Positions 1,308-39,940 of a DNA stretch of 64,000 nt are shown piece after piece; position 1 is the stretch's first letter, and each line of letters starts with the position of its first letter. The DNA lies in the IMG/VR virus record IMGVR_UViG_3300044625_001067, positions 186,001-250,000 of that record, one strand, 5' to 3'. Below the pieces are notes generated by a model. That model was not told the DNA's origin, did not search any database, and saw only the letters and a list, made by a program, of their open reading frames with translations. Made by a program: the position numbers and the translations under genes.

Positions 1308-3870
1308 CAAAGTGTTTTCAAAACGTGTTCATGTTTTTACGGCGGGACCCCAGGTTTCTGCCCAGGGCGTAGAAAGGGACTTCACACCCCAAGACCTTCA
1401 GCAAGTTGTTGATTCCTACGACCCCCAAACACATGAGGCACCCCTTGTTATTGGTCATACTGGGGACAACGACAGTGTTCCTTCTTTTGGGTGGGTCAAA
1501 AAGTTGGTCAGAAGCGGAGAGAAGCTATACGCAGACGTTGACTTCACTGACACTGCTAAAGATTTAGTGAAAAAAGGGCATTACCGCAAAGTCTCCATAT
1601 CCTTCTACTCTCCAAACTCTCCAATTAACCCGCATGAGGGACAGTGGAGCGTTCGGCACTTGGCACTTTTGGGAGCGTCGCCCCCTGCGGTTAAGGGCCT
1701 GGAGCCTTTCTCGTTCTCTGAGGAAGGTGACGGAGTGTTCAACTTCGCTTCAGCCCTCTCTCCCGAAGACATCTTTGACGATGAGCTCGGCCCCACACTT
1801 CTTGTTGAGCGAGGCCCGTTGGAAATCCTAAAGGAAAAGCTTGAGGAAATTCGTGGAGACATGAGTTCTTCTCTTCAAGAGCTACAAGAAAACCAAGACG
1901 ATCAGACTGAAACAGACGTCGATTCGACACAAACTACAAATTCGGCGGATGAAAGTACCGCCCCCGAAAACCCTAACCAGCAATTTTCCGAAATGAAAAA
2001 GAAAATGGGGCGTGAAGGAGCTGAAGTCTCCGAATCCGCTCAAAGTCTAGCAAACATGGAAGACAAATTTCCAGAAGAGAAGTTCGACGAAGGAGTCTCT
2101 CGCAAAGTTGCGAAAGGGGCTCACGGCCACCACGTACAAGTTGTGGAAGAGGTTTTTGAAGAGGGCGATGAAGAACTCTCGGACGAACACCGTGAGATTC
2201 CCGCTGCTTTCAAGAAAAATATCGCTAAGGTGAAGGCTAAGAACAAAGCCACCGATGATGGTGACGAAGGCGACGAAGATGAACTTTCCGAGGAACACGG
2301 AGAAGTTCCTGCGGCATTCAAGAAAAATATCGCTAAGATGAAGGCCAAGAGCGCGAAAGTGGAAGAGTCTGACGAGGAAGACTCTGAGGGCGACTACGCT
2401 GAGGTAGGCTACAAAACATCTGCAAATCGGAAGGCATCGTTTGGAAAACGTGCTGAGAAGGATCCAGGGGATCCAGCTGGTCGTTCTAAAACAGCACGGT
2501 CATCCGACGATAGCTACGGGGACCGTCAGTCGGTTGGACAAGGGGGTGAGGAAGACCGCGAAGGTTTGACTTCAGACGTGGCGCAAGACACGGACCGTTT
2601 AAACACTGCTAAGGACGGTGACCAGGAGCAAGACCGAGAAGAGCTGGCGAAGGCACTCGACGGTGAAGGGGACGAAGATTCCCGTTGGGCTGACCAACCT
2701 GAGGGTCGCCGCCGTTCAATGGAAGACGACCAGTACAACGATGGTGAGTACGGACTTCCAGGAAGAAACAAACCGGGAACCTCCGATGGAAACGACCCCC
2801 ACGGTCGCGACGGCGGGCCAACAACCGTCTCTGAGGACTCTGAGGAAGAGCCCGACACCGAGGACATTGCTGTGCCACTTCAGAGCACCAAGGGCAACAA
2901 AGTTTCTCGCGTTCTTCACCAAACCTCCGGACAAAAGAGGGCGTCGGTCAAAGGTAAGGAAATTGCGGATCACAGCGAAGAGTCCGACGGTGTTACACGA
3001 ACTGCGAAAAGGGCAGGTGTTTCTGCGGGGAACGACCCCCACGGTCGCGAAGACGGACCCACAAACTTCCCAGACCGGTCCGAGGAAGAGCCGGACGACC
3101 TCGACATTGCTGTCGACCTGGAAAATGTAGTGGGTAATCGCAAAGTTCGTGTGCTGCGTCAGAGATCGGGTGAAAAGCCTTCGATTGACCACGCTGAAGA
3201 AGACGATCTTGACGTTGAGGAGTGTGAGTCCACTGGGAGAGTTTCTCGCAAGTTTGCAGAACGCGATCCAATGACTCGAACCGGGAAAGGCTCCACTTAT
3301 GGGCAGAAGCGTCCCGTTATGGAAGAGGATCCGGACGAGGATGGCGACCGTGACGACAACGAATTCGCTGAAACTGACGACTTCTGTGGAATGGGGTCAA
3401 TGGGCCAGGCTAAGCCTATGGGTTATCCCACCCAAATGTTCGAAGAGTTCCAACGCGAGCTGGAAAATCTTAAGAGCGAAAATTCTCGCCTGAAGAAAGA
3501 GTACCAGGAGCATCAGACCAGAACACGTAAGCAACGCATCGCCGACTTTGTTGACAGCCTGTACACTGAAGGAAAAATGACTGACGGGGTAATTCCTCAG
3601 AGAGAGCTTCAAAACTACTGCGAAGGTCTTGAGTTCGGTACACTTGACTTCGCAGAAGGAGAAACTCCAACGACCAAGTTGTTTGCGCTGCTTGAGCGTT
3701 TGCCCAACATGGTTCACTTCGGTGAAGTTGTCGCAGAGGGACGTTTCAGTGACCCTGAAGATGACGAAGATCTAGACCCCCATTCTCGTGCAATGAAGAT
3801 GGTTCAGGCTGGAGAGTGCGACTATGTCGAGGCAATTAAGCGTTCCATTCCTTGGGGAGGTCGGGGCTGA
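1291..3870 (+). CDS. Mu-like prohead protease/scaffold protein with long acidic linker
   Basis: N-terminal HEAPLVIGH...FGWV...YRKVSISFY...HLALLGASPPAVKGL protease signature; acidic middle with internal repeats; C-terminal coiled-coil scaffold. Confidence 0.85.
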   Translation: MSTTSSKVFSKRVHVFTAGPQVSAQGVERDFTPQDLQQVVDSYDPQTHEAPLVIGHTGDNDSVPSFGWVKKLVRSGEKLYADVDFTDTAKDLVKKGHYRKVSISFYSPNSPINPHEGQWSVRHLALLGASPPAVKGLEPFSFSEEGDGVFNFASALSPEDIFDDELGPTLLVERGPLEILKEKLEEIRGDMSSSLQELQENQDDQTETDVDSTQTTNSADESTAPENPNQQFSEMKKKMGREGAEVSESAQSLANMEDKFPEEKFDEGVSRKVAKGAHGHHVQVVEEVFEEGDEELSDEHREIPAAFKKNIAKVKAKNKATDDGDEGDEDELSEEHGEVPAAFKKNIAKMKAKSAKVEESDEEDSEGDYAEVGYKTSANRKASFGKRAEKDPGDPAGRSKTARSSDDSYGDRQSVGQGGEEDREGLTSDVAQDTDRLNTAKDGDQEQDREELAKALDGEGDEDSRWADQPEGRRRSMEDDQYNDGEYGLPGRNKPGTSDGNDPHGRDGGPTTVSEDSEEEPDTEDIAVPLQSTKGNKVSRVLHQTSGQKRASVKGKEIADHSEESDGVTRTAKRAGVSAGNDPHGREDGPTNFPDRSEEEPDDLDIAVDLENVVGNRKVRVLRQRSGEKPSIDHAEEDDLDVEECESTGRVSRKFAERDPMTRTGKGSTYGQKRPVMEEDPDEDGDRDDNEFAETDDFCGMGSMGQAKPMGYPTQMFEEFQRELENLKSENSRLKKEYQEHQTRTRKQRIADFVDSLYTEGKMTDGVIPQRELQNYCEGLEFGTLDFAEGETPTTKLFALLERLPNMVHFGEVVAEGRFSDPEDDEDLDPHSRAMKMVQAGECDYVEAIKRSIPWGGRG

Positions 3871-3901
3871 TAGCTCCGAGACTTCTGCTCAGAGTGGAAC
3901 T

Positions 3902-4609
3902 ATGGACCTTCTAACTTTGGTCGGGCAGGTAACAAAAAAGCGAGCGGACTACTTCTCTCAAGCCGAGGTCTTAGCTCGCAAAGCGAAAACACAAGAGAAG
4001 CTGGAAAGTCTCATGACAAACCAGTCGAAAGTTCTTGTGAAGGCTTTGCGAGACAAGGACATTCGCTGGGAGGAGTACTCTCGAACTTTGATTGATAAGA
4101 CACTGTCTGCAGCCCTCGCTGCCGTTCACCTAGGGGCAGGAAAAGCCTCGCCACAAGCAAAAGTCGAACGGGCATGGGGCACTGTAACCGGGCAAATGCT
4201 CCCACCTTTGTTGGAATTCTTGAGCCAAACCGAACTAGCACTAAACGACGGATCCCTAATGCTCGGCGACGACCGCATAAATTTCTCGGAAATTGATCTT
4301 GAAGATATGTACGAAGGGGGCGAAGAGGTACTTCCACCGAAGCCGAAAATGTCTTGGCTGAGCCTTGTTACCAGAGTCGTTCGCTACCTTGCAAACCCTT
4401 CCTACTCATTTTTCAACCTTGGTGACTCCTACGTGAAACAAGAGCAGGGTTACCGGGAGATGCGACGAGTGCCAGTGTTGGACACGAGAACTTGTCCTGA
4501 CTGCATAAAGTTTGGGGAGAAGGGGTGGCAGCCCTTTGGAACCCTGCCGATGCCGGGGCAAGAGTGCCGGTGCTACGATCGCTGCCGCTGCCGAATCGAC
4601 TACCGTTGA
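3902..4609 (+). CDS. MuF-like minor head (morphogenesis) protein
   Basis: C-terminal RRVPVLDTRTCPDC...PMPGQECRCYDRCRC resembles MuF/SPP1 gp7 C-terminus; head-module location; ATG 3902 preferred over overlapping upstream start. Confidence 0.65.
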   Translation: MDLLTLVGQVTKKRADYFSQAEVLARKAKTQEKLESLMTNQSKVLVKALRDKDIRWEEYSRTLIDKTLSAALAAVHLGAGKASPQAKVERAWGTVTGQMLPPLLEFLSQTELALNDGSLMLGDDRINFSEIDLEDMYEGGEEVLPPKPKMSWLSLVTRVVRYLANPSYSFFNLGDSYVKQEQGYREMRRVPVLDTRTCPDCIKFGEKGWQPFGTLPMPGQECRCYDRCRCRIDYR

Positions 4610-4640
4610 CGAACACACACTAACCCACTAACATACCATT

Positions 4641-5063
4641 ATGGCTATTCTAAAACCAGTTGTTGAATCCCAAGTAGAAATTTCACTGTCTCGAGACGAC
4701 GGGAGTATGCGTTATGACCGGTCTTTCACAGCAATATCCGAGCTAATTGCTCACAGATTTGGAGCAGAAGTTACTTACGACCCTATAACGATTGAGTCAG
4801 TCTTTGATCCTATTTTTCACAAAGATCTTCTTGCGTACTGCGTAGACGCTTTCAAAAACCCTGAAAAGCATGGGGAAACCTTCACGCTTGTTCTATCAAT
4901 GCGTCATTCCCACGGAAGTGAACAAGGGACGCGAGCTCAGTACGAAATTACCGGTTGTCAGCTGATTGGGTTTTCCTTCCCTAAGTTCGACCGAAATGTC
5001 GGAGATGCGGCTAAGTTCAAACTATGCTTTAGACCCTCTGGATTGTCAAAACTTCTTACCTGA
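4641..5063 (+). CDS. Tail tube-like protein (paralog of 9515-9958)
   Basis: MAILKPVVESQVEIS vs MAILRPITKSQYEVS; YEITGCQ..FDR vs YTCYGCQ..VDR. Confidence 0.55.
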   Translation: MAILKPVVESQVEISLSRDDGSMRYDRSFTAISELIAHRFGAEVTYDPITIESVFDPIFHKDLLAYCVDAFKNPEKHGETFTLVLSMRHSHGSEQGTRAQYEITGCQLIGFSFPKFDRNVGDAAKFKLCFRPSGLSKLLT

Positions 5064-5067
5064 AGCA

Positions 5068-5075
5068 GGGTAAAA
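5068..5075 (+). promoter_or_regulatory. GGGTAAAR putative late promoter
   Basis: GGGTAAAA in intergenic gap upstream of 5151. Confidence 0.55.
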
Positions 5076-5150
5076 CCTGAATAACTAAGCTAGGTGAAAA
5101 ACAAGTCCTAGAGGAAACAACAAAACCAATAACCCTTTGAAAATATCAAA

Positions 5151-5624
5151 ATGTCTTTGAACATCGCACCAGTTTACGGTAAGCAATTCATTCGTTACGC
5201 GGAGACTTTCACCGCTGCTACTGACAACCAAGGTGGAACGGCTGGAGTCGTTGAAATTCCTGAGTTTGCAGTTGTTGCTTACGCAACCTATGCCGGAGCA
5301 AACAAAGTTTGCGCCCCTGGCAACCTAACCGCGTTTGATGGGAAGATTGTAGGTGTGAACCAGGCCTACATTCCCACAGCCCTGTCTCAACCTCGCACCG
5401 CTCGTCAAGCTTCTGTGGCCACCAGTGGCTCCTTGCTTGTTGAAGTGAGTGCCAGCGCCGTGGCCCCCTTCGTACTCAACGCCCAGCTTTCAGTTGGTGC
5501 TGACGGCAAGGCGCTACCCACTGCGAATACCGGGACCAACGTCACTCTTGACGGTACTATCCCGCTCATTCGTGAAATCGTGCGAATCGGCGGTCGCACT
5601 GTCTTGCTGGTTTCATTCGCCTGA
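5151..5624 (+). CDS. Capsid decoration/cement protein (DUF2190-like)
   Basis: Small Ala/Gly/Val-rich protein directly upstream of major capsid; IVGV...ASVATSGSLLVE...SVGADGKA pattern. Confidence 0.6.
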   Translation: MSLNIAPVYGKQFIRYAETFTAATDNQGGTAGVVEIPEFAVVAYATYAGANKVCAPGNLTAFDGKIVGVNQAYIPTALSQPRTARQASVATSGSLLVEVSASAVAPFVLNAQLSVGADGKALPTANTGTNVTLDGTIPLIREIVRIGGRTVLLVSFA

Positions 5625-5659
5625 GAAAAGCTGACGCATTTCGGTGCGTTTTCACTAAG

Positions 5660-5690
5660 AGCCTTCAACTTTCGAGTTGGGGGCTTTTTT
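5660..5690 (+). terminator. Intrinsic terminator
   Basis: AGCCTTCAACT-TTCG-AGTTGGGGGCT followed by T-run. Confidence 0.8.
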
Positions 5691-5702
5691 CGTGAAAAAG
5701 AA

Positions 5703-5710
5703 GGGTATAA
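5703..5710 (+). promoter_or_regulatory. GGGTATAA variant promoter for major capsid gene
   Basis: Variant of the recurrent motif just after the terminator, 96 nt upstream of capsid ATG. Confidence 0.5.
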
Positions 5711-5798
5711 CTACAGTGACCCCAAAGTTTTAGGACTCGCGGGTCGGATTGCTTCGGCAATCTTTGAAGTCAACTTTACACACAAGGAAACATCTATT

Positions 5799-8700
5799 AT
5801 GATGAATCATAAAGGTTCCACTCAGAGGTGACTCTGATTGAAAATCGGGTGAATTGCTGGGACACCTTAGTTTTGCTTTTGCAAAACAGGCAATCAGCAG
5901 CCAAGGCCCCTAGGGATAGGGGCAAGGTTCAACGACTAGGATAAGTAATCTAGAACAGAAGAAAGTCCCAAGAGCGCCCGACTCTTTGCTCAGGCAAAGA
6001 TGATGATATAGTCTGAACTTTACAGAAATGTAGAGAAGTAAAGGATAAAGAGCCTTTACGATAACAAGTTGCTACAACAGACCTATGCAGGGGTCGATCC
6101 CATTTTTTAGAGTGGCTTTGTTTTAACAAAGAAAATCCGGTGAATTGCTGGGACACCTTAGTTTTGCTTTTGCAAAATAGGCAATCAGCAGCCAAGTTTA
6201 CTTAGGGTCTTTACTAGCTATAGTAGAGTTAGGTAAAAAGGTTCAACGACTAGAAGATGACTGACCCAAGAATAACTCTTCCACGAGCGCCGGGACTCAC
6301 TAGTTACAGACAACTAAACAGATACTTTTTCTTCTTAGAAAAATTCGGTTCCCTCGAAAAGTTTAAATGCTGTCACGAACACCACATCCACCCAACTAAA
6401 ATGGGAGGAAGTGATGCCAAAGTGAACTTAATTTACCTTACACCCAGGGCCCATTACATCGCCCATCAGCTCCTCTTTAGAGCATTTACGGGAAACCAAC
6501 AAGCCCAACGGGCTGCTTGGCTTATGTCCCACACGATTGACGAAGCTTTCGTCAATTCTAGGGTGTATGAGTTTCTAAAAAATAACTACATTTTTTCTGA
6601 AGAGACCCGTAATAAACTTTCTGAAGCAGGTAGGAATAGGAAACTTAGTTTCGAGTCCAGAGAAAAAATCTCTAACTCAAACAAAGAAACCTACAGAAAC
6701 ACCTCTAAAGAAGTTCTACTAGAGAGAATTGAAAGGATGAGGGAGACTAAGAGAGGTACCCCGTGGAATGAGAGTCATAGAAACTCTATCCCCCCTTCTC
6801 TTCCTAGGGGGAGAGATCACTGGAGACTAAAAGATAGTCCATTATGGGGTGTATCCGATGAAATACTCAAAGTATGGCTAGAGAATGGTAAACCATCTTA
6901 TGTTATGCTTTGTAGATTGTTAGGAATCCCCAAAACTAAATCTGTTATGTCTGTAATAAAGAGTATGATATAGTCTGAACTCTTTGGAAACAAGGAGAAG
7001 TAGAGGATAAAGAGCCTTTACGATAACAAATGTCTTACAACCCTTGCACAAGGTTTTATGCTTCCGTCAACAAATATTGCGAATTTTATCGCACCGGTTG
7101 TTGACACTCCTACCAGAGCTGGGAGAATTCTCAGATTTGGGAAGGAACAGTTTGCTATAAACGATTTCCGTCGTGCTTACGGAACTAACATCCCATACGT
7201 CCAAAGCCGCTACGACTCTGAGCCTTATGCTCTAGAGCAGGAAGTGGTCGCCTGGGAATTGCCTGAAGAGGTTGAATCAATAGCCTCCATCAGTTGAGAA
7301 ACTGAAAGAAAAACTGGGTGAATTGCTGGGAAGCCTACGGCTTCAAACGAGAGTTTGAAACTATGGTAATCAGCAGCGAAGCGTTTTCGGGAGAAAACGA
7401 ACGTTCAACGACTAACAGCATACCACTAGAACAGTGATGAAGCTGACAAGAGCGCCTAGCACCCTAACAAGGGTGAAGATATAGTCTGAACTTTCTGGAA
7501 ACAGAAAGAAGTAAAGGATAAAGAGCCTTTACGATAACAGTATTGAATTGAAAACGCTGGCGAGGGTTGTTTGGCTCTTGCTGTGGCAGCTTAACCACAA
7601 ATTAACTGGGTGAATTGCTGGGATCCCTGAATTTCCATTAAAGAAACAGGCAATCAGCAGCCAAGTTTACTACGTCGAGAAGTCACTATGATTTCTGTGG
7701 TGAAAAGGTTCAACGACTAGACGATGAGTTTCGACAACAATAACTCGTCCACGAGCGCCCAGAGCAACATAACGTGCCATTACCGTAACAAATACGAAAA
7801 GTGGTACTGGACTTTAATCAACAAGTTTGAAAATAGAGACTACCTTCCAAAAAAGTTCGAAAATCACCACCCGGTACCAAAAGAGATCTGGCCCAAAGAC
7901 TGGGATAGTCGTGAGATTATAACCACTGTTGGAGTTAGTGTGAGGGAGCACTTCATACTACACCTACTACTAACCAAAGTGGGATTCAGCCACTCTTCCC
8001 TTATCAGATTTCTAAAAGGTTTTCGAAGGGGCCAACAAAGGGGCTTACACGCTACCAACTTAAAAAAGTTGTGGGATCGCTACCAGTTTAAGGGAGACAA
8101 TCTTCCGGATAAACCTTGGGAGCACAGCTACAGGGAAGATTTAAGTTTTCTCGACCTTTGGGTAGACGCTGACTACTTTTATTGGGTGTGGTTGAACATA
8201 CTTCCTACCCCCCTGGGGAAAGGATCCGGCTACCCCGGAAACGGCTATCGAAATCTGTCGAAAGCGGTTGGAGTTAAACCCACAAAGTCGATCAGAAGGA
8301 TGGTAATCTATTTCAAGGCAGGATGGGATCCCTTAAAGGACCCAAGTTGGTTAGATTTCGTTGCTAAGATATAGTCTGAACTTTCTGGAAACAGAAAGAA
8401 GTAAAGGATAAAGAGCCTTTACGATAACAATTTGCCTGCACAAGTAGATCTTCGTGCGATTGAAACAAGGAATGCGATGTCGAGGCTAAACACATTGGCC
8501 CTATGAGCTTAAGCTCATTTAGAAAATTGGGTGAATTGCTGGGAAACCTGACGGTTTCAGGAATGACTTCTCTGAAACACAAGGCAATCAGCAGCCAAGT
8601 TTACTACGTCGAGAAATCGCTATGATTTCTGTGGTGAAAAGGTTCAACGACTAGACGATGAGTTTCGACAACAATAACTCGTCCACGAGCGCCCAACTCT

Positions 8701-9486
8701 TTGCTTAGGCAAAGATGATGATATAGTCTGAGCTTCATGGAAACATGAAGATGTGGGGGATAAAAAGCCTTCACGATAACACAATGAATGAACAGCTACG
8801 AGTACACCGTTGCTCAAGCTGTTTCCGTCACCGCGACTTACAACCCTTACGAGCCCTATAACGGAACCGCAGGTTCCCAGACCGGACTCGGTTTCACAAC
8901 CTGGACAAACTTCAAGACAGCTTACGGCTCCGTTGCTGGAGACGCCGCCTGGTCTGGTGCTACTTCTAACCCAATTGAAGACATCCTAACCCTCAAGCGT
9001 GCAGTCGCCAACCAAATCGGTATCCGTCCAAACTCCGCAGTCGTCGGTACTGCCGTGTTTGACCTCTTGCTGACCAACGAGAAGATCCTTGATCGTATCA
9101 AGTACACATCTGCAGACAGCGTCGACACTGACGTCATTGCTCGCTACTTCGGTCTTGAGCGTGGCCTACGTGTTGCCGAAGGTCGTTACTTAGCGCAAGA
9201 TGGAACCCTACAGCCGGTATTCCCAGCTAACGGTATCCTTCTGTTCTACAGCCCTAACGGTCCTTCTGATTCCATCATGCCTGCTGGTGGTGCGAATGCT
9301 GCGACTCCTGCCTTCTCTTACACATATCAGCTCACAGGCACCCCCGCCGTCCGTCCCGAATACTACATTCGTGAACGTCGCGTTGTGCGTGCTGAAATCA
9401 CAATTGAACGTGTGGTTAACCTGGTTGGCCTCGGCGCAACTGGTCTTATCGGTTCTGGCGCTATGATCACCAACATCCTATCCTGA
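5799..9486 (+). CDS. Major capsid protein, spliced: join(5799-5807,6072-6103,7033-7272,7546-7567,8435-8487,8787-9486), 351 aa
   Basis: Removing five group I introns gives one 1056-nt frame: MMNLQQTYAGVDPILTTLAQGFMLPSTNIANFIAPVVDTPTRAGRILRFGKEQF...LPEEVIENAGEGPAQVDLRAIETRNAMSRLMNSYEY...; VDP.LT.LA.G / FGKE.F pattern of Mu-like capsids; RBS AAGGA upstream. Confidence 0.9.
5808..6071 (+). ncRNA. Group I intron 1 of capsid gene (264 nt, ORF-less)
   Basis: P1 GAAU|...GUUC with U-G; P3 CGGGUG/CGCCCG; GCAATCAGCAG; TTCAACGACTA; GATATAGTC; terminal G 6071. Confidence 0.9.
6104..7032 (+). ncRNA. Group I intron 2 of capsid gene (929 nt, carries HNH ORF)
   Basis: P1 CCAU|...GUGG; P3 CCGGUG/CGCCGG; same core motifs; terminal G 7032. 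Confidence 0.9.
6257..6973 (+). CDS. Intron-encoded HNH homing endonuclease with NUMOD3-like repeats
   Basis: HEHHIHP..MGGSD..NLIYLTPRAHYIAHQLL HNH signature; SEETRNKLSEA / SREKISNS repeats; lies within intron 2. Confidence 0.85.
   Translation: MTDPRITLPRAPGLTSYRQLNRYFFFLEKFGSLEKFKCCHEHHIHPTKMGGSDAKVNLIYLTPRAHYIAHQLLFRAFTGNQQAQRAAWLMSHTIDEAFVNSRVYEFLKNNYIFSEETRNKLSEAGRNRKLSFESREKISNSNKETYRNTSKEVLLERIERMRETKRGTPWNESHRNSIPPSLPRGRDHWRLKDSPLWGVSDEILKVWLENGKPSYVMLCRLLGIPKTKSVMSVIKSMI
7273..7545 (+). ncRNA. Group I intron 3 of capsid gene (273 nt, ORF-less)
   Basis: P1 GAGGU|...GCCUC; P10 UCAAU/AUUGA; P3 CUGGGUG/CGCCUAG; core motifs; terminal G 7545. Confidence 0.9.
7568..8434 (+). ncRNA. Group I intron 4 of capsid gene (867 nt, carries HNH-like ORF)
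   Basis: P1 GAGGGU|...GCUCUU; P3 CUGGGUG/CGCCCAG; core motifs; terminal G 8434. Confidence 0.9.
7724..8374 (+). CDS. Intron-encoded HNH-like homing endonuclease
   Basis: KYEKWYWTLI...ENHHPVPK...VSVREHFILHLLL; C-terminal region resembles that of 6257-6973; within intron 4. Confidence 0.75.
   Translation: MSFDNNNSSTSAQSNITCHYRNKYEKWYWTLINKFENRDYLPKKFENHHPVPKEIWPKDWDSREIITTVGVSVREHFILHLLLTKVGFSHSSLIRFLKGFRRGQQRGLHATNLKKLWDRYQFKGDNLPDKPWEHSYREDLSFLDLWVDADYFYWVWLNILPTPLGKGSGYPGNGYRNLSKAVGVKPTKSIRRMVIYFKAGWDPLKDPSWLDFVAKI
8488..8786 (+). ncRNA. Group I intron 5 of capsid gene (299 nt, ORF-less)
   Basis: P1 GGCU|...GGCC; P10 CAUU/AAUG; P3 UUGGGUG/CGCCCAA; core motifs; terminal G 8786. Confidence 0.9.
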
Positions 9487-9514
9487 TAAGGGAAGGTACT
9501 AAGGAGGTGACCCA

Positions 9515-9958
9515 ATGGCAATTCTCAGACCGATTACAAAGTCTCAGTACGAAGTTAGCTTCGTAGCTCCTGACGGACCCACACTAATCGCCACGTTTAC
9601 AAAATTCAGCGGAATCAAAGATTCCTCAAGTAGCAGTGACTACGCCAATGGTACTGGTAACCGTATTTACAAAGTTGTAGGCCCCAAAAAGGTAGACAAC
9701 ATCTCCCTTTCTGCTCCGTACGATCCCACGATCTTCAAGCAGTTGGAAATTTACTGGTTGCAGTATAATTGCAGAGAAATCACAGTTACAGTCACTCCGA
9801 AGGACTGTGTTGGAAACGGATCAGCCCCCGCTGGCGGCCAATACACTTGCTACGGATGTCAGTTCATGTCTCTTAATACCGCCGATGTTGACCGTGAAAG
9901 CGGCAATGTTCAGGAAATTGAGATTCAACTAACCGTGAACTCTTGGGACCGAACCTGA
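9515..9958 (+). CDS. Tail tube protein
   Basis: 147 aa, FTKFSGI...ITVTV...Y.CYGCQ..LNTADVDRESGNVQEIEIQLTV pattern of contractile tail tubes; RBS AAGGAGG. Confidence 0.65.
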   Translation: MAILRPITKSQYEVSFVAPDGPTLIATFTKFSGIKDSSSSSDYANGTGNRIYKVVGPKKVDNISLSAPYDPTIFKQLEIYWLQYNCREITVTVTPKDCVGNGSAPAGGQYTCYGCQFMSLNTADVDRESGNVQEIEIQLTVNSWDRT

Positions 9959-9970
9959 TTCTCAACTCGA

Positions 9971-10016
9971 AAAGCCCCCTAACCGGGGCTTTTTTTTTTT
10001 TTTTTTTTTTTTTTTT
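9971..10016 (+). terminator. Intrinsic terminator with unusually long T-tract
   Basis: AGCCCC-CTAACC-GGGGCT hairpin then about 27 T. Confidence 0.8.
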
Positions 10017-10028
10017 GTGCCTACAAGA

Positions 10029-10036
10029 GGGTAAAA
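10029..10036 (+). promoter_or_regulatory. GGGTAAAR putative late promoter
   Basis: GGGTAAAA right after terminator, upstream of 10065. Confidence 0.6.
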
Positions 10037-10064
10037 CCTCTGTAAGAACGAACCTTAAGAAGAA

Positions 10065-10541
10065 ATGGCCAAAACTCTGTTTTCAAGTGGCGTTGTCGTA
10101 ACAAGCGAGTGGCTAAATGGTGCAAGGAACATTGTTTTCGACGGCCAAGACCTTGACTGGCACTACGACCCCTTGGGTCTCGACGACCTTGAAAAAACAG
10201 GGCCCACAGGCTTAGACAGCCGCTACGTCACACTAACCACTGAGCAACCCACGTTGTCTGGCACCGGCCTACTTCTGTCGGGTACTCCGGTTTCCGGTTC
10301 AAAAGTTGTCACAGGGTACTGGGGGTTCGGCTTTGACCCTGCTTCAAACCCCACTCTCACTCAGAACTACAACAAGGCCCCGCGAAGTTTTCTAACAAAC
10401 CTTAAGTATAGCAACGCCAACGGCATCAGCCCTTCCTCGGCTAGCCAGAAATTCGCAGCGTTAGCAGACGCAGACTTGGTAACGAAAAAAGTATTGTCCG
10501 ACCAGCTCAACGCTCTTGTGGTGGATAACGGTACATACTGA
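10065..10541 (+). CDS. Hypothetical virion (baseplate/tail) protein
   Basis: ORF heading baseplate operon; GVVVTSEWLN N-terminus resembles tail-associated proteins. Confidence 0.5.
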   Translation: MAKTLFSSGVVVTSEWLNGARNIVFDGQDLDWHYDPLGLDDLEKTGPTGLDSRYVTLTTEQPTLSGTGLLLSGTPVSGSKVVTGYWGFGFDPASNPTLTQNYNKAPRSFLTNLKYSNANGISPSSASQKFAALADADLVTKKVLSDQLNALVVDNGTY

Positions 10542-10554
10542 ACGGAGAATCTAA

Positions 10555-13380
10555 ATGCCACGTTATTCACCGCTACCGTCGGTTTCCATTGACCCGCGCA
10601 ATGAAGCTGACTTGGTCCAAGCAGCGGCTCAAACCGTTTACGAAGCGTCCAACAAAACCCTGAACGACTTCAGTGCGGGAAACCCCCTAGCAGTCCTCCT
10701 TGAGGGGCAAGCTTTTGCTCAGGGAGAATTCTTGTACTGGGCCAACCAGCTCCCTGACAAAATCCTCATCGAGTGGATCGGACCCTTCTTAGGTGCCATG
10801 AGAAGGCTTGGGACAACCTCAACAGCTGAGCTGGTAATTTCGGTCCCGCCAACAAAGAGCTCCACGGTTATTCCCGCAGGGTCCCTATTCTCTACGAACC
10901 CTCAGCTAACAGCAGGAGAAAGCTACGAGTTTGTTACAAGTTCCGACCTGGTGATTCCGCCTGGAGACCTCACCGGTAGAGTCCCAGTTTACTCAAAGTT
11001 TGTAGGATCCGCCTATAACGTTCCCGCAAACTCAATCACCGGAACTTCAAACACAGGAACACTCAACTTATCCGCAACAAACCCTCAACCGTCTGTCGGC
11101 GGAAGTGACGTCGAGACTTTTCAGGAAGTTCAGGAAAGGTTCTTCACTCTAATTCGCAGGAGAAACCCCGTCAGTGGGTCCGACTGGCAAGATTTTTTCA
11201 CTGACTTGTATGGCATAGGCACTTTGACATCTGTCCAGCCGAACCGCTCCAGCTTCTACGGATACAACTACACACAAGACTACCTTCGCCCCAATGGGCA
11301 GGTGTCTTTTTTCGTGCTTGGGCCAAACGGTCAAGAACTTACAACTCAGCAACTGTCGCTGGGCCAAAACGCAGTAAATTTCTCTGTCCCGATTGAGAAT
11401 CAAGGACACTTGTTCCCCATTACGCTCAGCCAAGTTCAATACAACTTAACCGTAGAAGTAGACTCCAACGGGACTTTCGGGTCAAACTTTAAGGAGTCTG
11501 CACTCAATTTTCGAGACCGTCTCTTCTCAGTCTTCACTCCTGGGCAAGTTTTTCCTGCGAACGTGACTCCGACTGTGAGCGACATCGACGCAGCGTTCTA
11601 CGCAACTTTCGACACGAACACAAGGTTCAAAGATCCATCTGTAAAAGTATCGACCGCTTACAACACTCCGAACTCTCTCAATAAGGACGCGTCGGTATAC
11701 ACAAACATCTACGATTTTTCCGCGTCTGACAACCTGCTGGAAGAGGGTAACCTTATACTCGTCAATAGCCCCGCACCAACCTTCTACCCGGTAGAGTCAA
11801 ATTTTACACCCTACTCTTCGAACAAGAAAGATCAGACGGTTTACGGTAACCTTACGCTTAAACAGATTAGACCGCTAACCTCCGGGTCCTACTCCGTTGG
11901 TGACATAGTATATCATGATGGATCCGGGGATCTAGCCCAGCAAGGGTTGCATATTGTCCTGGAAAACATAAGCATCGGATCTTCTTCCGCTGTTTCTTCG
12001 TACATTCTGAACGGGAAGATCTCCGCAGTGAAAACCTTTTCGCCGTGGGAAATTGGAAACTCTTTCACATATTCCTCTGGCGGTACACTAGACCCTGAAA
12101 TTGTGGAGTATGACTACTCCTCAGGAGAGTTCGTTCCTCAAAGTCCCTCTGCAGTACCCTTAAATAGCCGTGCAGGAGGATTTGCCTGGCTAGTTTCAAA
12201 AAACTTTACACTCAACCCGTCCACCAACGATATTACTGGTGCTCAGGCAGAGTTTTTAGTCGGGCTTCCCGTGGTTCCTGCTCAGCTCACTGAAGGGTTG
12301 TCCTATGCCCAAGGAACGTGGGTTTCCACTCCCCAAGTGGGGGGAGGGCCCAATCCCGTTGTTGACCCTTACTACAACTACGTTGACTTAACAAAAGGCG
12401 CAATTGTGAAGTATGCCCGTGTCAATGCAGGCTTCACCTTTAACCCAAACCAGCTACCCATTAAGGAGTACTTTAGTAATCTTGTTGACAAGGGAATCCT
12501 ATCTGAGACTCTCGTGTTCGACGGGAACGGTGGATTACCTTTGTACAAGTATAAAGCTCGGTTCAAGCCAGGGCAGTACCTGTTGTATAAGGAAACTTCA
12601 TCTTCTTCAGCCACTTACTACGTTGCGTCTTCGCACTTCACCCCCAGTAGCACCAACATACAAGATTTGCTTAGCGAGGGTGTGGTTTACAACCTTGCTC
12701 CTAACCCTGCGCTTCAAACTCAGCTAGCTTCAGAACTAACGAACAACCCGCTCCTGCGAAAATTTGACAGAATGTTCACCTTTTTTCAGGGTGATCGCAC
12801 GTTCTTTCGAGAAGGTTCCGATGTGCAATCCTACACCGCCACCTCCGCAGTCACCCCCCTATTTGACTTTAGCATATATCTGAATAACGGCGTGTTCGTA
12901 AAGTCCGAGGAATTCGGCCCATCCCTTCTCCCCGTAGACGACTACATTCCTTACTTCAACCCTGCTTACTTAAACGCCACGGAAGACACGATCTTGAGTG
13001 AAGACGGTCGGAACTATTACAGAGTCATGAAGTCATTCACACCCCAGAAAACAGTGACGAACTGGTCCGGCCTGCCCGCAGACAACACCGCGAGGTACGA
13101 AGAGTACGCGGGCAACTTACTACGGTACGTAGTTTCCTATCGCTGTGAAGAGCCGGTGCTGTCCCAGTACGGTGTGGAAACATCTTCAATTAAGCTTGGA
13201 TCCTGCCAAATAACTGTTGTTCCTCGGAACTCCGGAAGGAACTTTAGCTCGTCACCAAGTTTAGCATACGTGTGGGAAAACACCTCAACCTTGAGTCAAA
13301 TTCCTGACTTATCCTGGTACACGGGAACAACTTTTGCGCTTAGCCCGCCGAACTACGGGGAGGGGACGTTAGCACTATGA
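10555..13380 (+). CDS. Baseplate J-like wedge protein with long C-terminal extension
   Basis: NDFSAGNPLAVLLE...IPAGS...G.AYNVPANSIT...ATNPQPSVGGSDVET..EV.ER baseplate J signature. Confidence 0.8.
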   Translation: MPRYSPLPSVSIDPRNEADLVQAAAQTVYEASNKTLNDFSAGNPLAVLLEGQAFAQGEFLYWANQLPDKILIEWIGPFLGAMRRLGTTSTAELVISVPPTKSSTVIPAGSLFSTNPQLTAGESYEFVTSSDLVIPPGDLTGRVPVYSKFVGSAYNVPANSITGTSNTGTLNLSATNPQPSVGGSDVETFQEVQERFFTLIRRRNPVSGSDWQDFFTDLYGIGTLTSVQPNRSSFYGYNYTQDYLRPNGQVSFFVLGPNGQELTTQQLSLGQNAVNFSVPIENQGHLFPITLSQVQYNLTVEVDSNGTFGSNFKESALNFRDRLFSVFTPGQVFPANVTPTVSDIDAAFYATFDTNTRFKDPSVKVSTAYNTPNSLNKDASVYTNIYDFSASDNLLEEGNLILVNSPAPTFYPVESNFTPYSSNKKDQTVYGNLTLKQIRPLTSGSYSVGDIVYHDGSGDLAQQGLHIVLENISIGSSSAVSSYILNGKISAVKTFSPWEIGNSFTYSSGGTLDPEIVEYDYSSGEFVPQSPSAVPLNSRAGGFAWLVSKNFTLNPSTNDITGAQAEFLVGLPVVPAQLTEGLSYAQGTWVSTPQVGGGPNPVVDPYYNYVDLTKGAIVKYARVNAGFTFNPNQLPIKEYFSNLVDKGILSETLVFDGNGGLPLYKYKARFKPGQYLLYKETSSSSATYYVASSHFTPSSTNIQDLLSEGVVYNLAPNPALQTQLASELTNNPLLRKFDRMFTFFQGDRTFFREGSDVQSYTATSAVTPLFDFSIYLNNGVFVKSEEFGPSLLPVDDYIPYFNPAYLNATEDTILSEDGRNYYRVMKSFTPQKTVTNWSGLPADNTARYEEYAGNLLRYVVSYRCEEPVLSQYGVETSSIKLGSCQITVVPRNSGRNFSSSPSLAYVWENTSTLSQIPDLSWYTGTTFALSPPNYGEGTLAL

Positions 13381-14651
13381 GTCAGAATCTGGTCGCATTG
13401 AACGGGGGGACTGCGCAAATTGAAACATCTTCCACTTTCGAGCAGGGTGTGAACCTTTCCCCCCAGTACGTGAATGCGCTTAAACTCCACCCCCACCCCA
13501 CTGAGTGGGTTGAAAACGGGAGGCCAATCTACGCACGTTTACCGTCGGCTTCGCAGCTTTACAAACTGGACTTCGGACTCGAGGACGAGTTTGCCTACAC
13601 TTACCTTCCCGTGAGCGATGGCCGCACGGGAACAGGGTCGCTTCAGGTTCAGTCTTCCGGGGAGAACAAGTTCCTGACAGTTCAGTCCGGAGTTGTGGTT
13701 TGGAAGTATGGGAGCTTAACGGTTGACCCTGTTATCATAAGCTTGGAAGAAATGGAAATGGTAAGTACGAAGTATCTTCTGGCCTACCAACTTTATTACG
13801 ACGACTCACCCTTTGTCGCTGAGTACTCTGTCAATAAATTTTCCTTATCTGGATACGACATAAGAGTAGAAAGTAGCACAGATGCTGTGCCAGGGTGGAG
13901 GTACAGTCCCGCTTTTGCTTTCACAGATCTTGAGTCTCAAGCGTGGAGAAACTTTGACGGTGTATTTCCGTCTTACGCGGGGCAAGCCTACCTGTCGTGG
14001 CAAAGCCCGCACCCCGCCGCTTACACCGAAGTTGAACTACGGTGCCCCGATGGCTCCTCGGTAACAGGCTCAGCGTCGCTTTATGTGTCGTCCAGCCCCC
14101 CCGAAAACGACGACGACCCCTACTGCTCAGATCCGGTATGGATCTTACAAGGTGCTTCCAATGTTGCTTCCGACGCTAACGGGCAGTACTTCAAGTTTTC
14201 AATTCCTGAACCCTCGTACAACCATGGGTGGAAAGTAGTATGGACGGATACCAAAGTGGCGATCAATCGGGTGCTTGTGAGTGGTACCCTGTCCTTGCTT
14301 AGAAAGCCCGCAGCAGCAACCTCCGTCATCAACCTAGTTGCTTATCCTGAAAACAGCGTACCGAAAACCGTCAGGAACAGCACAGGAAAGGAAGTACCGG
14401 TTACTCTGTGCAAACTGGCCTACGTGAGTATTGACGGGGCTTACCGTGTTGAAAAGATCACAGACCTGAGAGAGGTGGTTCACACAGACCACCAGCCCCT
14501 GGCTGATTGGCTTACACGTGCCCTGGATACAAATCTTATCAACCTGTTCTCGCAGGTGAACGGGTACTCGTCTTTGTGGATGAGCCCGCAAAACTGCATG
14601 AGACACGAATACGCCACTTTGCAGAACAATCTTGTAGCAGTGAAGGAGTGA
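13377..14651 (+). CDS. Putative baseplate protein
   Basis: ATGA overlap with baseplate J; long ORF; context only. Confidence 0.5.
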   Translation: MSQNLVALNGGTAQIETSSTFEQGVNLSPQYVNALKLHPHPTEWVENGRPIYARLPSASQLYKLDFGLEDEFAYTYLPVSDGRTGTGSLQVQSSGENKFLTVQSGVVVWKYGSLTVDPVIISLEEMEMVSTKYLLAYQLYYDDSPFVAEYSVNKFSLSGYDIRVESSTDAVPGWRYSPAFAFTDLESQAWRNFDGVFPSYAGQAYLSWQSPHPAAYTEVELRCPDGSSVTGSASLYVSSSPPENDDDPYCSDPVWILQGASNVASDANGQYFKFSIPEPSYNHGWKVVWTDTKVAINRVLVSGTLSLLRKPAAATSVINLVAYPENSVPKTVRNSTGKEVPVTLCKLAYVSIDGAYRVEKITDLREVVHTDHQPLADWLTRALDTNLINLFSQVNGYSSLWMSPQNCMRHEYATLQNNLVAVKE

Positions 14652-14652
14652 G

Positions 14653-39903: not shown

Positions 39904-39906
39904 CTA

Positions 39907-39921
39907 GGGTAAAACTGCTTA
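39907..39921 (+). promoter_or_regulatory. GGGTAAAR-N5-YA putative late promoter
   Basis: GGGTAAAActgctTA upstream of 39941. Confidence 0.6.
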
Positions 39922-39940
39922 TATGTGTTAGTTCTGAACA

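What the first reader, a model, noticed from the sequence alone, without database searches (positions are those of the whole stretch)
5799..9486. Major capsid gene split by five self-splicing group I introns, with micro-exons of 9, 32 and 22 nt
Seen in sequence: five copies of a group I core (GGTGAATTGCTGGGA / GYAATCAGCAG / TTCAACGACTA / GATATAGTCTGA). Each has its own P1 ending in a U-G pair matched to its own 5' exon, a terminal G, and compensatory changes in P3 (CGGGUG/CGCCCG, CCGGUG/CGCCGG, CUGGGUG/CGCCUAG, CUGGGUG/CGCCCAG, UUGGGUG/CGCCCAA). Joining exons 5799-5807, 6072-6103, 7033-7272, 7546-7567, 8435-8487 and 8787-9486 gives an uninterrupted 351-aa capsid protein. Exon 1 is only Met-Met-Asn, and 2632 of 3688 nt are intron. 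Established: phage group I introns mostly sit in DNA-metabolism genes, and multi-intron phage genes are known (e.g. Staphylococcus phage Twort). Inference: five introns in the most abundant virion protein is exceptional and makes capsid output depend on five splicing events. ORF callers would report only fragments.
Basis: partly seen in the sequence, partly recalled or inferred. Interest (0 to 1): 0.95.

Follow-up and report, generated by a model that had tools for sequence, protein, structure and literature searches.

The report
Capsid gene split by five introns
The major capsid gene of this large cyanophage-like virus is cut into six pieces, some only 9 to 32 bases long, by five self-splicing group I introns; relatives carry up to 13, which is extreme for a phage gene but is a known kind of mobile element.

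Summary
Rfam finds exactly five group I introns in the window, all on the + strand inside 5799-9486. That protein is residue-for-residue identical to an uninterrupted database protein (P0002). P0002 folds as an HK97 capsid protein.

Each intron has:
- a U·G wobble at its 5' splice site, paired to its own exon;
- a terminal G;
- an in-frame stop 2-8 codons into the intron.

Introns 2 and 4 carry HNH homing-endonuclease genes in P8.

The wider picture is larger than the finding. Related contigs hold 0 to 13 introns of this family in the same gene, at 15 sites, with exons as short as 5 nt. Transcript-like contigs lack all 11 introns of one relative while matching its exons and flanks at 100% nucleotide identity. 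No such contig was found for the window's own allele.

Compared with a nearly identical allele that has a different intron set, 38 of the 41 differences fall in the first third of the gene, beside intron sites, and the two proteins are identical. This looks like homing with co-conversion.

Multi-intron phage capsid genes are already published (crAss-like phages). I call this an extreme new member of a known kind. Interest 0.64.

The parts
5799..5807 (+). Exon 1: start codon(s) plus Asn (ATGATGAAT). An AAGGA ribosome-binding site lies about 10 nt upstream.
   Evidence: Some homologues start at the second ATG (P0016).
5808..6071 (+). Intron 1 (CDS site 9), 264 nt, no ORF. P1 is GAAU|C / GGUUC. 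It ends in G. An in-frame stop follows 7 codons after the 5' splice site.
   Evidence: Rfam 91.0 bits. The same site holds an 890-899 nt form in L004, L015 and L036; L004's carries a called 170-aa ORF.
6072..6103 (+). Exon 2, 32 nt.
6104..7032 (+). Intron 2 (site 41), 929 nt, with a homing-endonuclease gene in P8. P1 is CCAU|UU / GAGUGG. It ends in G. An in-frame stop follows after 2 codons.
   Evidence: Rfam 50.7 bits for the 5' part; nhmmer finds the 5' core and the 3' tail. The ORF-less 263-nt form in L019 places the ORF-bearing insert between about 6295 and 6963, i.e. between P3' and P7'.
6257..6973 (+). Intron-2 ORF, 238 aa: an HNH homing endonuclease with NUMOD3 motifs. Its ATG lies just after P7, and its first codons are ribozyme core (P3').
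   Evidence: phrog_655 homing endonuclease, 6.6e-28. Pfam NUMOD3. The HNH-like stretch is visible in the translation. About 30% identical to HNH homing endonucleases of large enterobacterial phages, one annotated 'Mob-like'.
7033..7272 (+). Exon 3, 240 nt.
   Evidence: phrog_1005 major head protein, profile positions 16-93, 6.3e-11.
7273..7545 (+). Intron 3 (site 281), 273 nt, no ORF. P1 is GAGGU|UG / UAGCCUC. It ends in G. An in-frame stop follows after 8 codons.
   Evidence: Rfam 107.2 bits. In L023 and L024 the exon change GAGGU to GAAGU is matched by the guide-sequence change GCCUC to GCUUC.
7546..7567 (+). Exon 4, 22 nt.
7568..8434 (+). Intron 4 (site 303), 867 nt, with a homing-endonuclease gene in P8. 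P1 has up to 10 exon-side pairs. It ends in G. An in-frame stop follows after 8 codons.
   Evidence: Rfam 69.3 bits. L017 has the same intron at 99-100% identity, with 20 nt in place of window 7763-8365. In L019 the exon and the guide sequence have both changed and still pair.
7724..8374 (+). Intron-4 ORF, 216 aa: a divergent HNH-type homing endonuclease.
   Evidence: phrog_655, 5e-13, plus three weaker homing-endonuclease PHROGs; translation. No Pfam hit and no PDB sequence match.
8435..8487 (+). Exon 5, 53 nt.
8488..8786 (+). Intron 5 (site 356), 299 nt, no ORF. P1 is GGCU|AA / UUGGCC. It ends in G. An in-frame stop follows after 6 codons. Its P6 and the stretch after P7 are near-identical to the site-303 intron.
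   Evidence: Rfam 95.5 bits. This intron is absent in L017 and L142.
8787..9486 (+). Exon 6, 700 nt including the stop codon.
   Evidence: Pfam Phage_cap_E, 1.2e-10; phrog_1005 positions 143-305, 4.6e-30.
9515..9958 (+). Downstream gene, 147 aa, tail-tube-like. It appears to be co-transcribed with the capsid gene.
   Evidence: phrog_35249 tail tube. It is present on all transcript-like contigs that reach it.
9969..9994 (+). Intrinsic terminator: a 10-bp stem followed by a run of T. It marks the 3' end of the capsid transcription unit.
   Evidence: Contigs L001-L007 and L020 all stop at or before it.

Best explanation
The capsid gene is transcribed as one precursor, from shortly upstream of 5799 to the terminator at 9969-9994. 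Five related group I ribozymes then remove themselves. Each pairs its internal guide sequence with the last 4-10 bases of its own upstream exon, leaving a U·G wobble at the cut. Each would use free guanosine for the first step (family mechanism, not tested here) and its own terminal G for exon ligation. Five ligations rebuild a 1056-nt reading frame for a 351-aa HK97-fold capsid protein. A stop codon 2-8 codons into each intron releases ribosomes before they reach the catalytic core. The introns are mobile selfish elements. The HNH endonucleases in introns 2 and 4 cut or nick intron-less capsid alleles of co-infecting relatives. Repair then copies in the intron together with neighbouring exon sequence and nearby ORF-less introns. 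Shown here: intron identity, boundaries, conserved structure with covariation, the restored protein, and population signatures of transfer. Inferred: self-splicing of this allele, endonuclease activity, and the route of spread.
For: Identity and boundaries:
- Five Rfam hits above the gathering score.
- The joined exons equal the uninterrupted database protein P0002, 351 of 351 residues.
- P0002 models with pLDDT 88 and pTM 0.85. Its best structural matches are 3bjq and then HK97-fold capsids and encapsulins.

Conserved structure:
- The consensus fold of 20 ORF-less family members has 43 pairs, 29 of them with compensatory double changes.
- Exon and guide sequence co-vary at the same site between strains, at sites 281 and 303.
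- Every one of the 27 distinct introns tabulated has the U·G wobble and an early in-frame stop, and all but one type end in G.

Independent assemblies:
- The same five-intron layout is in L018, from another sample, at 99.8% identity.

Splicing in relatives:
- L020 equals the 11-intron genome L019 with every intron absent. It is 100% identical over 2671 nt upstream and in the nine exons BLAST could align; reading the two sequences side by side shows all eleven upstream exons identical.
- L214 keeps only the aberrant site-93 intron and lacks the eight downstream ones.
- These contigs stop at the terminator, and L001-L007 start at window-equivalent positions 5730 or later.

Mobility:
- Versus L001 the window has 41 coding differences, 39 at third codon positions, and the proteins are identical. 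38 lie in the first 357 nt (P = 4e-15).
- L017 is 99.9% identical across introns 1-4 but about 95.5% identical in the flanks.
- Six sites have both a short (about 260-285 nt) and a long (about 800-950 nt) form. The extra sequence is an endonuclease ORF where examined, at sites 9, 41 and 303.
Against: No spliced or intron-less contig with the window's own synonymous codons was found in the viral or metagenome collections. Nothing experimental exists. That the transcript-like contigs come from RNA rests on their boundaries, their isoforms and my unverified recollection that IMG samples 33000127xx are metatranscriptomes; a paper search for the accessions found nothing. The exon-side P1 is only 4 bp for introns 1, 2 and 5. 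Intron 2 only just passes Rfam's threshold. The intron-4 ORF has no Pfam hit and may be degenerate.
Confidence: 0.9

Rival explanations
1. The introns are not only parasites. Stacked introns and their endonucleases act as weapons and immunity in competition between co-infecting related phages. A phage carrying an intron is protected at that site, and its endonuclease damages the capsid gene of intron-less rivals. Selection then favours accumulating many introns. This adds to the best explanation rather than replacing it.
For: An intron endonuclease of phage PhiPA3 has been shown to interfere with a co-infecting phage (PMC11620839, listed). Here many intron combinations coexist in near-identical capsid alleles. 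Intron blocks move between genomes that differ by 4-5%. Introns sit in the blocks of the protein that do not vary.
Against: Most introns in the richest genes have no endonuclease gene; all 11 in L019 are 259-280 nt. So they cannot attack anything themselves. Nothing here measures fitness. Selfish spread with endonuclease loss explains the same pattern.
Confidence: 0.3
2. The RNAs are group I introns but do not splice on their own in the cell. They need a phage or host protein, or the ribosome, to fold, so capsid output is gated by that factor.
For: From general knowledge, many group I introns need protein helpers in vivo, and efficient T4 td splicing in vivo depends on translation. Exons of 5-32 nt must serve the intron on each side, which should make folding harder.
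Against: All core helices are present and conserved with covariation. No maturase-like ORF was seen; the intron ORFs are HNH endonucleases.
Confidence: 0.15
3. Assembly artefact: the five near-repeats misled the assembler, so the number or order of introns in the window is wrong.
For: The introns share long near-identical modules. Contigs L008-L010 show a hybrid of the site-9 and site-93 introns with CDS nt 10-93 missing, which could be repeat collapse.
Against: Each intron's guide sequence matches its own flanking exon. The exons are in order and give a perfect frame. L018 from another sample has the same layout, and L017 and L142 differ only by whole introns.
Confidence: 0.04
4. A dead gene in a defective phage: the introns no longer splice and the capsid gene is decaying.
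For: There is no transcript evidence for this exact allele.
Against: There is not one amino-acid change in 351 residues relative to an uninterrupted allele. All differences are silent. The ribozyme cores are intact. The surrounding structural module has long open frames.
Confidence: 0.03

Closest known systems
crAss-like phages of the Delta and Zeta groups: capsid gene split by group I introns (Yutin et al. 2021, PMC7886860)
   Same: [quoted passage not shown] Gene callers fail on it in the same way.
   Different: Those were recognised from protein domains in the insertions. No RNA models, exact junctions or restored protein were shown in the passage read. Here there are five introns with nucleotide-exact junctions, exons down to 9 nt (5 nt in relatives), up to 13 introns, and a different phage lineage and habitat.
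Staphylococcus phage Twort orf142: three group I introns in one gene (Landthaler and Shub 1999, cited in PMC6669764)
   Same: Several related self-splicing group I introns in one phage gene. The window's intron cores match DNA in Staphylococcus, Streptococcus, Bacillus and Clostridium phage records at about 80-85% identity.
   Different: Three introns against five here and up to 13 in relatives. The Twort introns were shown to splice, with exon skipping observed; neither has been tested here.
Single capsid-gene introns: mycobacteriophage LittleE and lactococcal phage Tuc2009 (PMC3706429)
   Same: An intron in the most abundant virion protein, spliced efficiently late in infection, some with a homing endonuclease.
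   Different: One intron each, and no very short exons.
Fungal mitochondrial cox1, for example Agaricus bisporus, titled 'the largest reservoir of mitochondrial group I introns' (PMC2987802)
   Same: One conserved essential gene acts as a sink for many group I introns at many sites. From general knowledge, such introns occur with and without endonuclease genes and vary between strains (for the reference).
   Different: An organelle, not a virus. Those introns are diverse, whereas here nearly all belong to one closely related, recombining family.
Jumbo gut ('Jug') phages, 18.5 group I introns per genome on average (PMC12880540)
   Same: Large phage genomes in which essential genes are fragmented by group I introns, with splicing supported by metatranscriptome reads.
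   Different: There the introns are spread over many genes, and the terminase gene is split into two or three fragments. Here they are concentrated in one gene; Rfam finds none elsewhere in these 64 kb.
Homing with co-conversion: Bacillus phages SPO1 and SP82 with nicking HNH enzymes (Landthaler et al. 2004, cited in PMC3706429)
   Same: HNH endonuclease genes inside group I introns, and flanking exon sequence that travels with the intron. Here that shows as silent-site tracts and the L017 mosaic.
   Different: Endonuclease activity and cut sites are unknown here. The intron-2 enzyme is closest (about 30%) to HNH endonucleases of large enterobacterial phages.

Membership tests
Group I self-splicing intron (Rfam RF00028) | Conserved catalytic core (P3-P9) recognised by a covariance model | tested here: met
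   Five hits at 50.7-107.2 bits against a gathering score of 50, each spanning model positions 1-253.
Group I self-splicing intron (Rfam RF00028) | Helices maintained by compensatory base changes | tested here: met
   RNAalifold on 20 family members gives 43 pairs, 29 with double compensatory changes, including P3, P6, P9 and P9.1. P7 was not predicted because it is part of a pseudoknot.
Group I self-splicing intron (Rfam RF00028) | P1 helix between the 5' exon end and an internal guide sequence, with a U·G wobble at the splice site | tested here: met
   All five window introns and all 27 distinct relatives tabulated have it, with 4-10 exon-side pairs. Exon and guide sequence co-vary at sites 281 and 303.
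Group I self-splicing intron (Rfam RF00028) | [quoted passage not shown] | tested here: met
   All five window introns end in G. One intron type in relatives (site 93 in L019, L103, L156 and L167) appears to end in A.
Group I self-splicing intron (Rfam RF00028) | Exon ligation restores a functional product | tested here: met
   The joined exons are identical to the uninterrupted protein P0002. P0002 models as an HK97 fold.
Group I self-splicing intron (Rfam RF00028) | Guanosine-dependent self-splicing of the RNA | not testable with these tools
   This needs an in vitro transcript or RNA reads. Indirect support comes from contigs L020 and L214 of a sister genome, which lack 11 and 8 introns precisely.
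HNH homing endonuclease encoded in an intron | HNH catalytic motif and DNA-binding modules | tested here: inconclusive
   Intron-2 ORF: phrog_655 at 6.6e-28, Pfam NUMOD3, and a visible HNH-like stretch. Intron-4 ORF: phrog_655 at 5e-13 only, with no Pfam hit. Neither matches a PDB sequence.
HNH homing endonuclease encoded in an intron | Cleaves the intron-less allele and promotes homing | not testable with these tools
   Population signatures agree with homing: silent-site tracts beside intron sites, the L017 mosaic, and long and short forms at the same sites.
HK97-fold major capsid protein (Pfam PF03864, Phage_cap_E) | Sequence match to the family | tested here: met
   Exon 6 alone scores 1.2e-10, and P0002 scores 2.9e-10. 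phrog_1005 major head protein matches both exon 3 and exon 6, collinearly.
HK97-fold major capsid protein (Pfam PF03864, Phage_cap_E) | HK97 fold | tested here: met
   The AlphaFold2 model has pLDDT 88. Foldseek finds 3bjq (E = 2e-23, TM 0.70/0.80), then the capsids of P23-45, YSD1, Chi and lambda, and encapsulins.
HK97-fold major capsid protein (Pfam PF03864, Phage_cap_E) | Position in a head-and-tail structural module | tested here: met
   Portal, maturation protease, capsid, tail-tube-like protein, baseplate and terminase lie on one strand. The gene order matches Synechococcus phage S-CBWM1, whose capsid gene is uninterrupted.

The most novel reading that the evidence does not exclude
This capsid gene is the site of an ongoing intron 'bloom' in a lineage of large phages whose closest isolate is a Synechococcus phage. 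One family of group I introns has multiplied inside a single essential gene to 15 sites, with up to 13 per gene and exons down to 5 nt. It spread partly by jumping to new sites that share the few bases read by the guide sequence: sites 9 and 93 both end in GAAU and carry near-identical introns. It also spread by recombination between copies. The number per genome would be driven by conflict between co-infecting phages, each intron giving immunity to one endonuclease. If so, this would be the most intron-dense gene I know of in any phage or bacterium, and a natural system for studying how many ribozymes fold and splice side by side on one bacterial mRNA.
Probability: 0.35. Interest if true: 0.85.

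Novelty: new member of a known kind. Interest (0 to 1): 0.64.

Why it matters
1. Annotation. Gene callers see only 79-aa and 232-aa fragments of the capsid protein. Public protein sets hold many 232-236 aa 'hypothetical proteins' that are its last exon, some on contigs of 256-282 kb. Capsid-based phage classification and marker surveys will miss or mis-size this lineage.

2. RNA biology. Five ribozymes in the window, and up to 13 in relatives, must each fold correctly on one mRNA. They are separated by exons of 5-53 nt that serve one intron as 3' exon and the next as 5' exon, in a cell where ribosomes follow the polymerase.

3. Evolution. The population offers dozens of natural combinations of presence and absence at 15 sites, with visible conversion tracts. 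It is a rare chance to read the full cycle of intron invasion, endonuclease loss and spread to new sites in one gene.

4. Ecology. If the endonucleases act between co-infecting phages, the locus records competition among aquatic phages.

Tried and rejected
- My first spliced-alignment script had free intron positions and no indels. It produced dozens of spurious 'introns' in relatives at about 70% nucleotide identity and shifted two window junctions by 1-3 nt. I replaced it with one that allows introns only where nhmmer finds intron cores or tails and requires a T before and a G at the end.
- Exact searches for the window allele's spliced junctions found nothing: a 44-nt pattern spanning junctions 281 and 303, and a 32-nt pattern spanning 281 alone.
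- Paper searches for the SRA and IMG accessions of the transcript-like contigs found nothing useful. Their RNA origin is therefore not documented.
- PDB sequence searches with the two endonuclease ORFs gave no match.
- The GTDB genome scan, meant to suggest a host, returned five phage contigs binned into unrelated MAGs.
- I did not build my own covariance model. The introns are about 270 nt, beyond the stated calibration time limit. I used nhmmer profiles and Rfam instead.
- I considered inteins, frameshifting and a split gene assembled from separate fragments. I rejected them because the intervening sequences are RNA-model hits with stops in all relevant frames, and the exons are too short to be separate proteins.
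- The number of site pairs sharing the same bases before the cut is only about 3-4, against roughly 1.2 expected (my own rough estimate, not a tool result). I do not claim it as significant.

Full report

Yes, in every particular. Rfam's group I intron model (RF00028) gives five hits above its gathering score in the 64-kb window. All are on the + strand and all lie inside 5799-9486 (107.2, 95.5, 91.0, 69.3 and 50.7 bits). The weakest hit is intron 2, whose internal ORF splits the model. Separate nhmmer profiles find both its 5' core and its 3' tail.

The six stated exons (9, 32, 240, 22, 53 and 700 nt) sum to 1056 nt and translate to 351 residues without a stop. The introns are 264, 929, 273, 867 and 299 nt long, 2632 of 3688 nt. 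A spliced alignment of my own returns the same junctions, at CDS nt 9, 41, 281, 303 and 356. It was run against an intron-less coding sequence and allowed introns only where intron cores were detected.

**2. Is the joined product a real protein?**

- Exon 3 alone matches PHROG 1005 (major head protein) at profile positions 16-93.
- Exon 6 alone matches the same profile at 143-305, and Pfam Phage_cap_E.
- A database search with exon 6 returned P0002, an uninterrupted 351-aa protein.

So do 35 distinct intron-less relatives, homologues at about 30-40% identity that align from residue 1-14 onward, and the solved structure 3bjq, which aligns to residues 11-139.

P0002, modelled with a 98-sequence alignment, gives pLDDT 88 and pTM 0.85. 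Its structural neighbours are 3bjq and then the capsid proteins of P23-45, YSD1, Chi and lambda, and encapsulins. This is the HK97 fold. The five junctions fall after residue 3, in codons 14 and 94, after residue 101 and in codon 119. By my reading of the model these are the N-terminal arm, the region just after the long hairpin, and the long helix.

**3. Anatomy of the introns**

- P1 and guide sequence. Every intron follows a U that pairs with a G in a guide sequence 6-15 nt inside the intron. The P1 helices are GAAU|C/GGUUC, CCAU|UU/GAGUGG, GAGGU|UG/UAGCCUC, up to 10 exon-side pairs for intron 4, and GGCU|AA/UUGGCC. Every intron ends in G.
- Early stops. An in-frame stop lies 7, 2, 8, 8 and 6 codons after the five 5' splice sites, always before P3. 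From general knowledge of T4 td, such stops keep ribosomes out of the core.
- Covariation.
- Exon and guide co-variation. At site 303 the window pairs exon CGAGGGU with guide GCUCUUG, while L019 pairs GGAAGGU with GCCUUCC. At site 281, GAGGU/GCCUC becomes GAAGU/GCUUC in L023 and L024. Silent exon changes answered by guide-sequence changes are hard to explain unless P1 is in use.
- Endonuclease ORFs. Introns 2 and 4 carry ORFs of 238 and 216 aa that match homing-endonuclease PHROG 655. The first also has NUMOD3 motifs and a clear HNH-like stretch, and is about 30% identical to HNH endonucleases of large enterobacterial phages. Comparison with ORF-less versions of the same introns places the ORF-bearing inserts between P3' and P7', i.e. 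in P8 (window about 6295-6963 and 7763-8365). Each ORF starts at an ATG just after P7 and reads through P3'.
- Composition. Introns are 42% G+C and exons 51%.

**4. Context**

The window is the one-strand structural module of a large tailed phage. It encodes portal, maturation protease, capsid, a tail-tube-like protein, baseplate, terminase and giant fibre proteins. The closest isolate is Synechococcus phage S-CBWM1. It has the same local gene order and an uninterrupted 1026-nt capsid gene.

Window 2788-15483 is 100% identical to part of the 277-kb contig IMGVR_UViG_3300044625_001067, so that contig (L011) is not independent evidence. L018, from another sample, has the same five-intron layout at 99.8% identity. 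A strong terminator at 9969-9994 follows the next gene.

**5. The wider picture: one gene, many introns**

Of the 80 closest IMG/VR loci, 25 show intron signatures in this gene. Scanning IMG/VR for the intron core motif found clusters of 2-7 exact copies in 18 loci. All of them fall in or next to homologues of this capsid gene. Junction mapping gave these layouts:

| Locus | Introns | CDS sites |
|---|---|---|
| L017 | 4 | 9, 41, 281, 303 |
| Window, L018 | 5 | 9, 41, 281, 303, 356 |
| L142 (protein identical to the window's) | 5 | 9, 41, 281, 303, 895 |
| L015 | 5 | 9, 36, 75, 93, 318 |
| L114 | 6 | 9, 36, 75, 93, 318, 895 |
| L156 | 9 | 36, 41, 93, 150, 281, 318, 356, 895, 927 |
| L019 | 11, all 259-280 nt and all above Rfam's threshold | 9, 41, 93, 150, 160, 192, 273, 281, 303, 318, 356 |
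| L167 (locus ends before the last 216 nt of the CDS) | 11 | as L103 up to 356 |
| L103 + L136 (279-kb contig 3300044846_005229) | 13, 12 of them above Rfam's threshold | 9, 36, 41, 93, 150, 160, 192, 273, 281, 318, 356, 895, 927 |

That makes 15 distinct sites. Exons are as short as 8, 10 and even 5 nt. The 5-nt exon CCCAT lies between the site-36 and site-41 introns in L103 and L156, and L167 and L034 give the same junctions.

The sites sit in the parts of the protein that do not vary. Residues 1-119 have mean conservation 0.993, against 0.942 for the rest. The two C-terminal sites lie in another almost invariant block, about residues 281-320.

The introns form one family at 53-90% pairwise identity, except the 215-nt site-75 intron at 54-60%. 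They are mosaics. For example, the window's intron 1 shares a 100% identical P6 with introns at sites 36 and 318. Its intron 5 shares P6 and the stretch after P7 with the site-303 intron.

**6. Evidence for splicing in nature**

L020 matches L019 at 100% over 2671 nt upstream and in the nine exons BLAST could align, and at 99.9% downstream. Reading the two sequences side by side shows all eleven exons upstream of the last identical. All 11 introns are precisely missing.

L214 starts 13 nt before the site-93 intron, keeps that intron, and lacks the eight downstream ones. L001-L003 are fully intron-less, and L004-L007 keep only some of the introns at sites 9, 36 and 75. L001-L007 begin at window-equivalent positions 5730 or later, and all eight contigs stop at or before the terminator. 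Genomic contigs run on in both directions.

Such boundaries and such mixtures of retained and removed introns are what transcripts look like. I recall that the IMG 33000127xx series are lake metatranscriptomes. I could not verify this.

For the window's own allele no spliced contig was found. All five of its sites are among the 11 that are clean in L020.

**7. Evidence for mobility**

P0002's DNA (L001) differs from the window's joined exons at 41 of 1056 positions. 39 of these are third codon positions and the two proteins are identical. 38 lie in the first 357 nt (P = 4e-15). The density is 0.53 and 0.78 changes per codon beside the intron sites of either allele, against 0.01-0.02 elsewhere. 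This fits exon sequence imported with the introns from distant donors, in a region where the protein cannot change.

L017 is 99.9% identical to the window across introns 1-4 but only about 95.5% identical on both sides. That indicates recent transfer of the block.

Six sites have both a short and a long form. The extra sequence carries an endonuclease ORF where I examined it, at sites 9, 41 and 303. This is the expected cycle of invasion and endonuclease loss.

The introns at sites 9 and 93 are 89% identical, with almost the same P1-P2. Both follow GAAU. This suggests a jump within the gene to a site that fits the guide sequence. It is an inference.

**8. Comparison with what is known**

- Single introns in phage capsid genes are published (Tuc2009, LittleE; PMC3706429).
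- A crAss-like capsid gene in five fragments is published (PMC7886860).
- Three introns in Twort orf142 are published (cited in PMC6669764).
- Intron-rich jumbo gut phages, with splicing supported by RNA reads, are published (PMC12880540).
- The nearest analogue in behaviour is fungal mitochondrial cox1 (PMC2987802).

The kind is therefore known. New here are the degree (five in the window, 13 in a relative), the very short exons, the concentration of one recombining intron family in one gene, and the lineage.

**9. Verdict**

The finding is real and correctly interpreted (confidence 0.9). It is a new and extreme member of a known kind. Interest is 0.64. It would rise if the intron-bloom and phage-conflict reading of the whole gene family is confirmed.

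Noticed in passing
L103 + L136 (IMGVR_UViG_3300044846_005229); L019:2601-5999; L167; L156: Relatives of this capsid gene carry 9 to 13 group I introns in one gene, at 15 sites in all. Two of these sites are near the 3' end (CDS nt 895 and 927). The window's five is mid-range.
   Followed up: yes
L156 (reverse strand, about 2250-2256 of the reverse complement); also L103; same junctions in L167 and L034: A 5-nt exon (CCCAT) lies between the site-36 and site-41 introns. Four of its five bases form P1 of the next intron.
   Followed up: partly
L019:3292-3568 (also L103, L156, L167, L214): This version of the site-93 intron has a different 3' tail and appears to end in A, not G, judging from the intron-less contig L020. 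It is also the one intron retained in the transcript-like contig L214, so it may splice slowly. No explanation yet.
   Followed up: partly
L008, L009, L010 (e.g. L010:790-1736): [quoted passage not shown] This is either recombination between paralogous introns or repeat collapse in assembly.
   Followed up: no
L004:1305-1519, L015:1642-1856, L016:1149-1363, L023:3758-3972: The site-75 intron (215 nt) belongs to a different subfamily. It is 54-60% identical to the others, has TTCAGAGACTA in place of TTCAACGACTA, and lacks the common 3' tail. It is retained in 4 of 7 transcript-like contigs.
   Followed up: no
window 5061-7762 compared with L017: A 2.7-kb block holding introns 1-4 is 99.9% identical between two genomes whose flanks differ by 4-5%. 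This indicates recent lateral transfer of the intron block.
   Followed up: partly
window 1291-3870: An 859-aa ORF has a head-maturation-protease N-terminal part (phrog_976, Mu-like_Pro) followed by about 500 further residues with no match. It may be a protease-scaffold fusion.
   Followed up: no
window 5655-5695 and 9969-9994: Hairpins followed by T runs bracket the capsid and tail-tube-like gene pair. The downstream one is a strong terminator (10-bp stem). The upstream one was seen by eye only.
   Followed up: partly
window 35131-43564: Two adjacent giant ORFs (1590 and 1207 aa) match tail-fibre families.
   Followed up: no
L209-L213 (GTDB MAG contigs): Homologous capsid genes sit on short contigs binned into Gammaproteobacteria, Gemmatimonadaceae, Microbacteriaceae, Opitutales and Micrococcales MAGs. 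These are probably phage contigs binned by mistake, and they give no host information.
   Followed up: no
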